From: Octopus bimaculoides
Lineage: Eukaryota
Assembly: GCF_001194135.2 (NCBI RefSeq)
Contig: NC_068985.1
Coordinates: 115,099,604 to 115,138,059 of the forward strand
Direction: 5' to 3'
Length of the DNA: 38,456 bases
Each line of letters begins with the position of its first letter. The first letter of the stretch is position 1. The notes beneath the pieces are model-generated. The model saw nothing but the letters and a program-made list of their open reading frames with translations. It did not search any database and was not told the origin of the DNA. The translations under genes and the position numbers were made by a program. Shown here one piece after another: positions 10,052 through 10,492 of the stretch.

Positions 10052-10379
10052 TGATTGTGGGTTTTCGTATATTTTTCACTTATTTTACTTGGTGTCAAAG
10101 CTTGGTACAATCCCCCATATAATATGAACGTAAGAAATGAAGGTGCATTTATTTTTTTTATATGATTACAAATGTTTCGTAACCTTCATTATATTGTATT
10201 AAATTCAGTTCTATATTTAAGAGATGAGAAATTACGTACATTATTTACATTTGACGGATATTTGTCCTCATCTTGTTTGTTGATAACACAACGTTTCGGC
10301 TGATATACCCTCCAGCCTTCATCAGGTGTCTTGGGGAAATTTCGAACCTGGGTTCTCATTCCTAAGGTATTTTTCTATG

Positions 10380-10429
<50 letters not shown>

Positions 10430-10492
10430 CGAACTCGGAATCTTGGAGTTAGTAGCCCGCGCTCTTAACCACCACTACGCCATATGCTCGTG
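10052..10492 (-). mobile_element. Non-coding element: tRNA-like Pol III head + (TAA)n linker + hammerhead ribozyme + AT-rich 3' region
   Basis: Minus strand reads catatggcgtagtgg (A box, here with a 3-nt duplication)..gagttcgatt (B box, 10427-10436), (TAA)n at 10380-10426, hammerhead at 10286-10329, and ends at gaaaacccacaatca (10052-10066). Confidence 0.7.
10286..10329 (-). ncRNA. Minimal type I hammerhead ribozyme, intact core
   Basis: ACAC-CUGAUGA-A-GGCUG(gagggUaUaU)CAGCC-GAAA-CGU-U-GUGU: stem I 4-5 bp, perfect 5-bp stem II, palindromic ACGU stem III, GUU cleavage triplet, one extra A after A9. Confidence 0.85.

What the first reader, a model, noticed from the sequence alone, without database searches (positions are those of the whole stretch)
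10052..10492. Candidate retrozyme-like system: Pol III tRNA head plus hammerhead ribozyme in one ~440-bp non-coding unit
Seen on the minus strand, in order: a tRNA-like head with A and B boxes, a (TAA)n linker, about 50 bp with a second GGTTCGAA, an intact hammerhead, and a ~230-bp AT-rich tail. There is no ORF. Known: Schistosoma Sm-alpha repeats combine tRNA-like Pol III boxes with a type I hammerhead, newt satellite 2 and retrozymes are hammerhead-containing non-autonomous repeats, and Penelope-like elements carry this minimal ACGU type. Inference: a self-transcribing, self-processing non-autonomous retroelement that borrows a Penelope-type RT. I do not know of a description from cephalopods, but I cannot check the literature here.
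Basis: partly seen in the sequence, partly recalled or inferred. Interest (0 to 1): 0.9.

Follow-up and report, generated by a model that had tools for sequence, protein, structure and literature searches.

The report
Octopus SINE carrying a hammerhead ribozyme
This is one copy of a dispersed, non-coding octopus repeat that joins a tRNA-derived promoter head to a Penelope-type minimal hammerhead ribozyme module; the two parts really do travel together, a design known so far mainly from blood flukes.

Summary
The described features are all present on the minus strand. The hammerhead is far beyond chance: 1 hit in the window, 0 in 1000 shuffles.

Two corrections. The repeat unit is about 291 bp (10492 to about 10203), not 440 bp.

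I recovered other copies through spurious proteins that the repeat encodes. They come from an Octopus sinensis chromosome, its O. vulgaris orthologue and short assembled contigs.
- **Order is kept.** Head, AAT-type linker, GGTTCGAA box, hammerhead and an ~85-nt tail recur in the same order.
- **The linker is secondary.** One locus has head and body joined with no microsatellite.
- **The hammerhead is Penelope-type.** It has every diagnostic trait of Penelope-like-element minimal hammerheads: an extra base after A9, a G10.1-C11.1 pair and a palindromic ACGU.
- **Insertions look Penelope-like.** Five of six loci carry an inverted partial copy at the 5' end.

The chance-nesting rival is rejected. 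The "non-autonomous, Penelope-mobilised" reading is supported only indirectly, because no octopus Penelope sequence could be compared. "Retrozyme-like" is not supported: there is one hammerhead per unit and no tandem array in octopus.

Cleavage and Pol III transcription are untested. The closest precedent is the Schistosoma Sm-alpha element. I found no published description for octopus.

The parts
10513..10565 (+). Inverted partial copy of the SINE head (positions -3 to ~50 of the tRNA-like region). It is cut at AAGATTCC and followed by (ACC)n-type low-complexity DNA.
   Evidence: It is an exact match to the head 32-mer. It forms an inverted repeat with 10437-10565 at 80%. It is 100% identical to the family head consensus over 53 nt. 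Equivalent inverted partners occur in L001, L004, L006 and L011.
10493..10512 (-). 20-nt spacer between the two heads. It contains a nested mini-palindrome (CATATGCC, then GGCATATG-like).
   Evidence: Read directly from the sequence.
10427..10492 (-). tRNA-derived SINE head. A box is 10482-10472 (11/11). B box is 10435-10425 (8/11 in this copy, 10/11 in the family). The head is truncated in the T-loop by the microsatellite.
   Evidence: 92% identity to the family head consensus. ARAGORN and the Rfam tRNA model are negative.
10381..10427 (-). (TAA) linker of about 15.7 repeats. It is a secondary microsatellite expansion of the AATAATAAC junction, and it replaces about 25 nt (CCAGGCAGTGACCTGAA) present in other copies.
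   Evidence: The alignment of nine units. L006 has no expansion. L001a, L001b, L011 and L015 have other AAT, AAC or A-rich runs at the same place.
10331..10380 (-). Pre-hammerhead segment of the body, with a second B-box-like GGTTCGAA (10348-10341).
   Evidence: It is conserved in all octopus-type copies. It is the only GGTTCGAA in the window.
10285..10330 (-). Minimal type I hammerhead of the Penelope-like-element type. Predicted cleavage is after U at 10290.
   Evidence: One descriptor hit in the window against 0 in 1000 shuffles. The MFE fold forms helices I and II. An identical architecture occurs in L001/L002 and in the group B units. One compensatory base pair is seen.
10203..10284 (-). 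3' tail of the unit. It ends near ...TTAAATATAGAACTGAA. There is no poly(A) or simple-repeat tail.
   Evidence: Similarity to L001a, L004, L011 and L015 ends here. The body is 98% identical to the family consensus over 174 nt, but the consensus was partly built from this copy.
10052..10202 (-). It is not part of the repeat family.
   Evidence: It has no similarity to any other copy.

Best explanation
Window 10492 to about 10203 (minus strand) is one insertion of a dispersed, non-autonomous octopus SINE of about 260 bp before microsatellite growth.

**5' module (shown at sequence level).** It is a tRNA-derived head with an internal Pol III-type A box and B box.

**3' module (shown at sequence level).** It is about 175 bp and carries a Penelope-like-element (PLE) type minimal hammerhead. 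An AAT-type microsatellite has grown at the junction of the two modules.

**Proposed mechanism (inferred).**
1. Pol III starts a few bases upstream of the head and reads through the whole unit. The unit has no internal TTTT.
2. The 3' module mimics the terminal (pLTR / 3'-end) part of a PLE RNA, so the PLE RT / GIY-YIG endonuclease copies and integrates the RNA. This is analogous to LINE-tail-bearing SINEs.
3. Such integration often leaves an inverted partial copy at the 5' end, as seen here at 10513-10565.

**Role of the hammerhead (inferred).** It has no helix III of its own (palindromic ACGU). It could therefore cut only when paired with a second copy, in trans or in a tandem. In this single-hammerhead unit its main role is more likely as part of the RT-recognised, end-defining 3' module than as a circle-making device.

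**State of this copy (shown).** It keeps an intact hammerhead sequence but has lost the 3' end of its B box, so it is probably a weakened or dead copy.
For: **Composite unit.**
- O. sinensis L001 9830-10158 aligns to window 10495-10202 at 80% over 333 bp, with the same module order.
- The O. vulgaris orthologue is identical.
- In L006 both arms carry a head directly followed by the body.
- L011 has a head remnant, an A-rich linker and the body.
- Seven units reach the body's 5' start. All seven are preceded by the AAT-type junction. Five of the six informative ones have a head.

**Multi-copy.** 68 protein clusters carry the body-derived peptide.

**Hammerhead is real.**
- 1 hit against 0 in 1000 shuffles.
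- The family consensus keeps the full core.
- Pair 17-31 is U-A in 7 sequences, C-G in 5 and U-G in 1, and never unpaired.

**PLE type.**
- It has a nucleotide between A9 and G10.1, a G10.1-C11.1 pair and palindromic 15.2-16.2. These are the criteria listed in PMC4209133.
- An inverted partial copy lies at the 5' end in the window, L001a, L004, L006 and L011, and in 3 of 4 group B loci. PMC8557442 describes this for PLEs.
- There is no poly(A) or LINE-like tail.
- The body is homologous to 126-129-nt tandem min-HHR arrays in another eukaryote. That is the organisation of PLE-derived retrozymes (bioRxiv 10.64898/2026.07.22.740005).

**Non-autonomous.** No RT or EN domain was found in the window.

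**Pol III compatible.** A box 11/11, 32 nt between the boxes, and no TTTT in the sense strand.
Against: - No octopus PLE sequence was available. Identity between the SINE body and a PLE 3' end or pLTR is not shown.
- ARAGORN and the Rfam tRNA model do not recognise the head.
- Rfam hammerhead models give nothing at E<=10.
- Absence of TTTT is not significant (P about 0.36 by shuffling).
- Covariation is weak: one compensatory pair, and 18 of 500 shuffles reach the score.
- Most copies have a decayed hammerhead, as expected for dead copies. This also means there is no evidence of selection on dispersed copies.
- No target-site duplication could be read, because the flanks are microsatellites.
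- The sample is small (six octopus-type loci) and was ascertained through the body.
- PLE min-HHRs cleave poorly in vitro even as dimers (PMC4209133).
Confidence: 0.7

Rival explanations
1. Chance nesting. An unrelated tRNA-SINE ending in a (TAA)n tail happens to lie next to a solo hammerhead fragment of a truncated Penelope-like element.
For: - The head is cut in its T-loop by (TAA)n in this copy.
- Solo min-HHRs are common in metazoan genomes (PMC4209133).
- Two loci have bodies without a detectable head: L001b and L004.
Against: - Head and body recur in the same order and orientation in three further independent loci.
- In L006 they are contiguous, with no microsatellite.
- The head-less bodies are a 5'-truncated inverted pair (L004) and a 65%-identical decayed copy (L001b).
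Confidence: 0.03
2. The whole unit is simply the terminal repeat (pLTR / UTR) of an autonomous Penelope-like element. On this reading the tRNA-like stretch is part of that element's own promoter region, and the copies seen are solo or truncated pLTRs.
For: - PLE pLTRs contain promoters and hammerheads, and most genomic copies are truncated (PMC4209133, PMC6765202).
- Penelope families are active in octopus (PMC13282606).
- No PLE sequence could be compared here.
Against: - The units have a sharp 5' end at the tRNA-like +1/-3 position and a sharp 3' end about 85 nt after the hammerhead in several loci.
- The flanks differ at every locus.
- No RT or GIY-YIG ORF adjoins any of the six loci.
- The RT-like matches in L001 are to a LINE-type RT and lie more than 7 kb from the two SINE copies.
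Confidence: 0.1
3. An ordinary LINE-mobilised tRNA SINE (RTE, CR1 or L2 partner) that carries a hammerhead-containing fragment as passive cargo. The hammerhead plays no part in its mobility.
For: - Octopus SINEs are usually classed as tRNA-Core or tRNA-Deu with LINE partners, and LINEs are abundant (PMC8967140, PMC13282606).
- LINE RT fragments are present in L001.
Against: - There is no poly(A) or simple-repeat 3' tail.
- Inverted partial copies recur at the 5' end, which is not typical of LINE-driven SINE insertions.
- The whole body down to its 3' end is homologous to tandem hammerhead units in another organism.
Confidence: 0.14
4. A true retrozyme. Unit-length RNA is excised by hammerhead self-cleavage, circularised by a tRNA ligase, and the circle is the transposition intermediate.
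For: - The body is homologous to 126-129-nt tandem hammerhead arrays, with intact ribozymes in L013.
- The start (ATAGAAA) and end (ATAGAAC) of the body overlap. This could reflect copying of a more-than-unit-length template.
Against: - Double cleavage needs two hammerheads on one transcript. All octopus-type units have one, and no tandem body was seen.
- Genomic copies extend about 85 nt past the cleavage site and begin with a Pol III head, not at the cleavage site.
Confidence: 0.08

Closest known systems
Sm-alpha / Sj-alpha SINE-like retroposons of Schistosoma (Ferbeyre 1998; Laha 2000; summarised in PMC2770079 and PMC6765202)
   Same: - Short and non-coding.
- A tRNA-derived head with a Pol III promoter, followed by a type I hammerhead.
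- High copy number.
   Different: - Sm-alpha has a canonical hammerhead with loop-loop contacts that Rfam detects. This one is the minimal PLE type with no helix III and an extra base after A9.
- The parent tRNA differs, and so does the phylum.
- Sm-alpha is typically tandem, whereas the octopus units are dispersed monomers or inverted pairs.
Minimal hammerheads of Penelope-like elements (Cervera & de la Pena 2014, PMC4209133)
   Same: - Core CUGANGA...GAAA.
- Unpaired nucleotide between A9 and G10.1.
- G10.1-C11.1 pair.
- Palindromic ACGU in place of helix III.
- Short helix I (5 bp) and a 6-bp helix II.
- Inverted partial copies at insertions.
   Different: - Here the ribozyme is not in the terminal repeat of an RT-encoding element. 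It sits in a ~260-bp unit headed by a tRNA-like promoter.
- Dispersed solo min-HHRs were previously attributed to truncated PLEs.
Metazoan non-LTR retrozymes (PMC7229834; bioRxiv 10.64898/2026.07.22.740005)
   Same: - Non-autonomous.
- Carry a hammerhead.
- Proposed to depend on PLE machinery and to derive from pLTRs.
- AT-rich and a few hundred bp long.
   Different: - Retrozymes are tandem repeats, usually with canonical type I hammerheads, and are expressed as 170-400-nt circular RNAs.
- No Pol III head has been described for them.
- The octopus unit has one minimal hammerhead and a tRNA head.
LINE-tail SINEs (tRNA head plus the 3' end of the partner LINE; Ohshima & Okada model, cited in PMC10886601)
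   Same: The same modular logic applies. A borrowed Pol III promoter is joined to a borrowed 3' recognition module of the autonomous partner.
   Different: - The partner module here appears to be PLE-derived and contains a ribozyme.
- There is no poly(A) or simple-repeat tail.

Membership tests
Hammerhead ribozyme, type I, PLE-type minimal variant | Conserved core C3 U4 G5 A6 N7 G8 A9 ... G12 A13 A14, A15.1 / U16.1, and H17 (not G) | tested here: met
   The sequence reads CUGAUGA ... GAAA C G U U (10325-10290). Found with the descriptor search and read directly.
Hammerhead ribozyme, type I, PLE-type minimal variant | Helices I and II flank the core, with open ends at helix I (type I) | tested here: met
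   Helix I has 5 bp (GACAC / GUGUU). Helix II has 6 bp (GGCUGG / UCAGCC). Both appear in the MFE fold.
Hammerhead ribozyme, type I, PLE-type minimal variant | Extra nucleotide between A9 and G10.1, a G10.1-C11.1 pair, and palindromic 15.2-16.2 with no helix III (criteria of PMC4209133) | tested here: met
   A at 10318, G10317-C10298, and ACGU at 10294-10291.
Hammerhead ribozyme, type I, PLE-type minimal variant | Match to a curated hammerhead covariance model (Rfam) | tested here: not met
   There is no hammerhead hit at the gathering score or at E<=10. Intact tandem group B units are missed too, so the models do not cover this class.
Hammerhead ribozyme, type I, PLE-type minimal variant | Base-pair covariation across relatives | tested here: inconclusive
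   Across 13 sequences there is one compensatory pair (UA x7, CG x5). The score is 0.213 against 0.171 in shuffles, and 18 of 500 shuffles reach it.
Hammerhead ribozyme, type I, PLE-type minimal variant | Site-specific self-cleavage | not testable with these tools
   This needs in vitro transcription of monomer and dimer constructs.
tRNA-derived SINE | Internal Pol III A and B boxes at tRNA-like spacing | tested here: met
   A box 11/11. B box 10/11 in the family and 8/11 in this copy. There are 32 nt between the boxes in L001a.
tRNA-derived SINE | Recognisable tRNA cloverleaf or homology | tested here: not met
   ARAGORN finds nothing in the window or in six loci. The Rfam tRNA model gives nothing at E<=10. 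By eye only the D-arm, anticodon-loop and T-loop order is visible.
tRNA-derived SINE | Short, non-coding, dispersed multi-copy family with defined ends | tested here: met
   There are six independent octopus-type loci, 68 peptide clusters, and shared 5' and 3' ends.
tRNA-derived SINE | Target-site duplications and a 3' end shared with an autonomous partner | tested here: inconclusive
   The flanks are microsatellites, so no TSD can be read. No octopus PLE or LINE 3' ends were available.
tRNA-derived SINE | Transcription by RNA polymerase III | not testable with these tools
   Only compatibility is shown: there is no internal TTTT.
Non-LTR retrozyme | Tandem repeats with a hammerhead in each unit, allowing double self-cleavage | tested here: not met
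   The window has a single hammerhead. No tandem body occurs in any octopus-type locus. The feature is met only in the unrelated group B contigs.
Non-LTR retrozyme | Expression as small circular RNA | not testable with these tools
   No RNA data could be examined.
Autonomous Penelope-like element | ORF with a telomerase-like RT and a GIY-YIG endonuclease | tested here: not met
   There is no such ORF or Pfam domain in the window, or next to the copies in the other loci.
Autonomous Penelope-like element | Insertion architecture with an inverted, usually 5'-truncated copy next to the 5' end | tested here: met
   Seen in the window (10513-10565), L001 (9779-9836), L004, L006 and L011, and in group B loci L003, L013 and L014. 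In the window the inverted piece keeps its 5' end and lacks the 3' part.

The most novel reading that the evidence does not exclude
A substantial part of the octopus-specific SINE expansion is driven by Penelope-like-element machinery rather than by LINEs, through a ribozyme-bearing 3' module.

More generally, many of the thousands of 'solo' minimal hammerheads scattered in invertebrate genomes would be cargo of Pol III-headed SINEs, not truncated PLEs.

The 'tRNA promoter plus hammerhead' design would then have arisen independently at least three times: in Schistosoma Sm-alpha, in octopus, and in the unidentified eukaryote of ENA ERZ21867824, where a different tRNA-like head precedes the same ribozyme family.
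Probability: 0.3. Interest if true: 0.75.

Novelty: new variant of a known kind. Interest (0 to 1): 0.6.

Why it matters
**Octopus genome biology.** SINEs are the largest repeat class in octopus genomes: 11.6% of O. vulgaris, mostly 'unclassified' (PMC13282606). If this family is a sizeable part of them, its partner would be a Penelope-like element, and it would carry a ribozyme that standard tools (Rfam) do not see.

**Origin of solo hammerheads.** It offers a concrete explanation for the many dispersed solo minimal hammerheads in animal genomes.

**A second test system.** It gives a system beside Schistosoma to ask what a hammerhead does inside a Pol III-transcribed retroposon.

**Annotation.** Pieces of this SINE are annotated as proteins or first exons in UniProt and RefSeq octopus entries.

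Tried and rejected
- **Rfam.** The gathering and E<=10 searches gave only sub-threshold miRNA-hairpin hits to the head palindrome (window) or unrelated weak hits (L001, L013). There was no tRNA and no hammerhead.
- **ARAGORN.** Nothing found.
- **Repeats within the window.** There is no second copy.
- **Head 20-mer scans.** No matches in metagenome or viral contigs.
- **Concatenated head-peptide search.** No hits.
- **DNA look-ups.**
  - P0001 and P0002 failed. The gene's longest isoform, P0005, worked.
  - P0028 (O. bimaculoides) returned no DNA because the gene span is too long.
  - L015 starts inside the linker, so it says nothing about the head.
- **RT next to the group B array in L003.** It is a LINE-type APE+RT, not a PLE, so it did not link the ribozyme family to a PLE.
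- **tblastn with that RT.** It found nothing in the window.
- **Pfam.** Ten window ORFs gave nothing relevant.
- **Literature.** Searches for a SINE + hammerhead + Penelope + Pol III description returned no paper. Lunse 2017 and Ferbeyre 1998 are not held.
- **Rejected idea: (TAA)n as the SINE's 3' tail.** Rejected because L006 joins head and body without it.
- **Rejected idea: the ~230-bp tail.** Rejected because homology ends at about 10203.
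Full report
**1. What is in the window**

The window is gap-rich, microsatellite-rich eukaryotic DNA: 36% GC and 12 N runs. Read on the minus strand, the region contains the following parts in order.
- **Inverted partial head.** It is the reverse complement of + strand 10513-10565.
- **Spacer.** 20 nt.
- **tRNA-like head, 10492-10427.** The A box TGGCGTAGTGG matches the consensus 11/11. 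The B box is AGTTCGATTAA.
- **Linker, 10427-10381.** (TAA) repeated about 15.7 times.
- **Pre-hammerhead segment.** 50 nt, containing the window's only GGTTCGAA.
- **Hammerhead motif, 10330-10285.**
- **AT-rich DNA downstream.**

ARAGORN finds no tRNA. Rfam finds no tRNA or hammerhead, even at E<=10 on 1.5 kb. The only Rfam hits are sub-threshold miRNA-hairpin matches to the palindrome made by the two heads.

**2. The hammerhead is real**

I wrote a descriptor for minimal type I hammerheads with these requirements:
- the core CUGANGA;
- 0 or 1 bulged base after it;
- helix II of at least 4 bp with G10.1-C11.1;
- GAAA;
- a palindromic 15.2-16.2;
- U16.1 and H17;
- helix I of at least 4 bp.

The descriptor hits once in 38 kb on both strands, at 10330-10285. 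It hits zero times in 1000 dinucleotide-preserving shuffles, and zero in another 1000 with stricter helices. The isolated 46-mer folds into helices I and II.

Three features were not all part of the search. The bulged base was optional in the descriptor, while the G10.1-C11.1 pair and the ACGU palindrome were required by it. All three are what Cervera and de la Pena give as diagnostic of Penelope-like-element (PLE) minimal hammerheads (PMC4209133):
- an unpaired A between A9 and G10.1;
- a G10.1-C11.1 pair;
- the palindrome ACGU in place of helix III.

Such ribozymes are thought to work only as dimers, and they cleave poorly in vitro.

**3. Finding other copies**

No eukaryotic genome can be searched directly with these tools. 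I therefore translated the stop-free frame through the hammerhead (10374-10192) and searched protein collections.
- The first search hit UniProt A0A0L8FV75 of Octopus bimaculoides.
- A six-frame concatenate hit O. sinensis LOC115224785. Its predicted N-terminus, MRTQVRNFPKTPEEGWRVYQPKRCVNN, is a translated copy of the element.
- Through the gene's longest isoform I obtained 47 kb of the O. sinensis chromosome (L001) and the O. vulgaris orthologue (L002).
- An exhaustive HMMER search found 68 protein clusters carrying the peptide.
- Several of these gave 1-2-kb Logan contigs (L004-L012, L015).
- Three gave 20-kb pieces of large ENA contigs from an unidentified eukaryote (L003, L013, L014).

**4. 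Head and hammerhead travel together**

The composite recurs at independent loci:
- **L001a.** L001 9830-10158 aligns with window 10495-10202 at 80% over 333 bp, in the same order: head, AAT/AAC microsatellite, GGTTCGAA segment, hammerhead, tail. O. vulgaris has the identical orthologous copy.
- **L006.** It is an inverted dimer of two complete units. In each arm the head runs straight into the body with only AATAATAAC between them. The (TAA)n linker is therefore a secondary expansion, not a SINE tail.
- **L011.** It has the first 12 nt of the head, an A-rich degenerate linker, and then the body.
- **L015.** It begins inside an (AAT)n run directly upstream of the body.

Two loci lack a head:
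- L004 is an inverted pair of bodies truncated at the hammerhead.
- L001b is a 65%-identical copy with half the ribozyme deleted.

An alignment of nine units gives a ~260-bp consensus, and homology ends near ...TTAAATATAGAACTGA. In the window the unit therefore ends at about 10203, not at 10052.

**5. State of the copies**

The consensus retains a perfect hammerhead. Among individual copies only the window and L001a/L002 are intact. The others have typical decay, much of it at the two CpGs of CCGAAACG.

The window's copy has lost about 25 nt after the T-loop, including the CC of the B box, to the microsatellite. The unit has no TTTT on the sense strand, which is compatible with Pol III read-through but not significant (P about 0.36).

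**6. Link to Penelope-like elements**

Direct comparison with an octopus PLE was not possible. The indirect evidence is as follows.
- **(a) Ribozyme type.** See section 2.
- **(b) Inverted partners.** An inverted partial copy abuts the 5' end of the unit in the window, L001a, L004, L006 and L011. The same is seen in three of four group B loci. Craig et al. describe this as the usual PLE insertion structure, together with a bias for microsatellite targets (PMC8557442).
- **(c) No LINE-like tail.** The unit has no poly(A) or simple-repeat 3' tail.
- **(d) Homology to tandem arrays.** The body, from about 15 nt upstream of helix I nearly to its 3' end, is homologous to 126-129-nt tandem hammerhead repeats in the ENA contigs. 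Those in L013 have intact ribozymes. That organisation matches non-LTR retrozymes, which a 2026 preprint derives from PLE pLTRs.

Between the octopus and group B ribozymes, the fourth pair of helix II changes from U-A to C-G. Across 13 sequences this pair is never unpaired. The overall covariation signal is weak.

No RT or EN domain occurs among the ten least-repetitive ORFs of the window. The RT near one group B array is a LINE.

**7. A second head**

In L013, the minus strand from 10025 to 9716 carries, in order:
- a different A/B-box-bearing tRNA-like sequence (TGGCGTAACGG ... GGTTCAATTCT);
- a ~110-nt leader, which also starts several of the predicted proteins (MANGIR...);
- one hammerhead unit.

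This suggests the same architecture arose with another head in another organism. It rests on one locus, and ARAGORN and Rfam do not call a tRNA there.

**8. Mechanism**

*Shown.* This is a multi-copy, non-coding composite of a Pol III-type head and a PLE-type ribozyme module, with PLE-like insertion structures.

*Inferred.*
- Pol III transcribes the unit.
- The 3' module is recognised by a PLE RT/EN, as LINE tails are in classical SINEs.
- The hammerhead lacks its own helix III and is present once per unit. It could act only by pairing with a second copy, so it more likely serves as part of the recognition and end-defining module than to make circles.

The retrozyme route (double cleavage, then ligation to a circle) is unlikely for the octopus units. 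They have one ribozyme, and the genomic copies extend about 85 nt beyond the cleavage site.

**9. Comparison with the known, and novelty**

The nearest precedents are the Sm-alpha/Sj-alpha elements of Schistosoma: a tRNA-derived, Pol III-transcribed SINE with a canonical hammerhead (PMC2770079, PMC6765202). The present family differs from them in several ways:
- ribozyme class (minimal, PLE type, invisible to Rfam);
- head sequence;
- phylum;
- dispersed or inverted rather than tandem arrangement.

Hammerhead_1 loci have been counted in giant squid (PMC6962438). Octopus SINEs are known to be very abundant and mostly unclassified. In the searchable literature I found no description of a hammerhead in an octopus SINE, or of a Pol III-headed SINE with a PLE minimal hammerhead. 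Repbase, Dfam and SINEBase could not be consulted. I therefore rate this as a new variant of a known kind.

**10. Limits**

- The sample is six octopus-type loci, ascertained through the body.
- Abundance cannot be estimated beyond one incidental copy in about 90 kb.
- Partner identity, transcription and catalysis are all untested.

Noticed in passing
window 10451-10551: The two inverted heads form a ~100-nt hairpin. It gives sub-threshold Rfam hits to several miRNA precursor models (best: mir-3923, 48 bits against a gathering score of 94). This is probably just the inverted repeat, though such hairpins can feed small-RNA pathways.
   Followed up: partly
L001 10003-10120 (O. sinensis CM016884.1, about 18.7767 Mb): All three RefSeq isoforms of LOC115224785, a cysteine-rich membrane protein, start inside this SINE copy. 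They splice from a GTAAGT donor created by a point change in the SINE tail. The SINE-derived 36-residue N-terminus is probably 5' UTR read as coding; the real start looks like the downstream MKAPAS signal peptide.
   Followed up: partly
proteins P0001 (UniProt A0A0L8FV75_OCTBM) and P0028 (RefSeq XP_052825882.1, 'dystrobrevin beta isoform X1', 94 aa): These are database proteins built from translated SINE sequence. The N-terminus of P0028 (MPMGIWHSGEGWRVYQPKCC...) joins the head's A-box region directly to the hammerhead. This is either a deleted copy or a splice within the SINE.
   Followed up: no
L013 10126-10383; L003 10139-10515: An unidentified eukaryote (ENA ERZ21867824) carries tandem arrays of 126-129-nt units, each with a minimal hammerhead of the same family. 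The units are intact in L013 and decayed in L003. Each array is flanked by an inverted partial unit.
   Followed up: partly
L013 9716-10025 (minus strand): A different tRNA-like head (A-box-like TGGCGTAACGG, B-box-like GGTTCAATTCT), a ~110-nt leader and one hammerhead unit lie here. This may be the same SINE architecture with another head in another organism. It is a single example.
   Followed up: partly
L001 9700-10300 and L013 9650-10450: Rfam 15 reports no hammerhead at E<=10, even for sequence-perfect minimal hammerheads in tandem. Genome annotations based on Rfam will systematically miss this class.
   Followed up: yes
window 10566-11060 and 11500-11970: Long imperfect trinucleotide tracts ((ACC)n-like, then (CTT)n) flank the insertion. 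They generate long spurious ORFs, for example 10512-10964 on the minus strand. They fit the reported PLE bias for microsatellite targets, but they also hide any target-site duplication.
   Followed up: no
family consensus; window 10380-10374 and 10214-10208: The body begins with ATAGAAA and ends with ATAGAAC. This may be a short terminal redundancy, as expected if the module was copied from a tandem or circular template. It may also be coincidence.
   Followed up: no
L001 17473-17943, 30907-32272, 39898-42295: Several LINE-type RT fragments lie in the introns and flank of the O. sinensis gene (tblastn, 26-38% identity to the L003 LINE RT). They are unrelated to the SINE copies.
   Followed up: no
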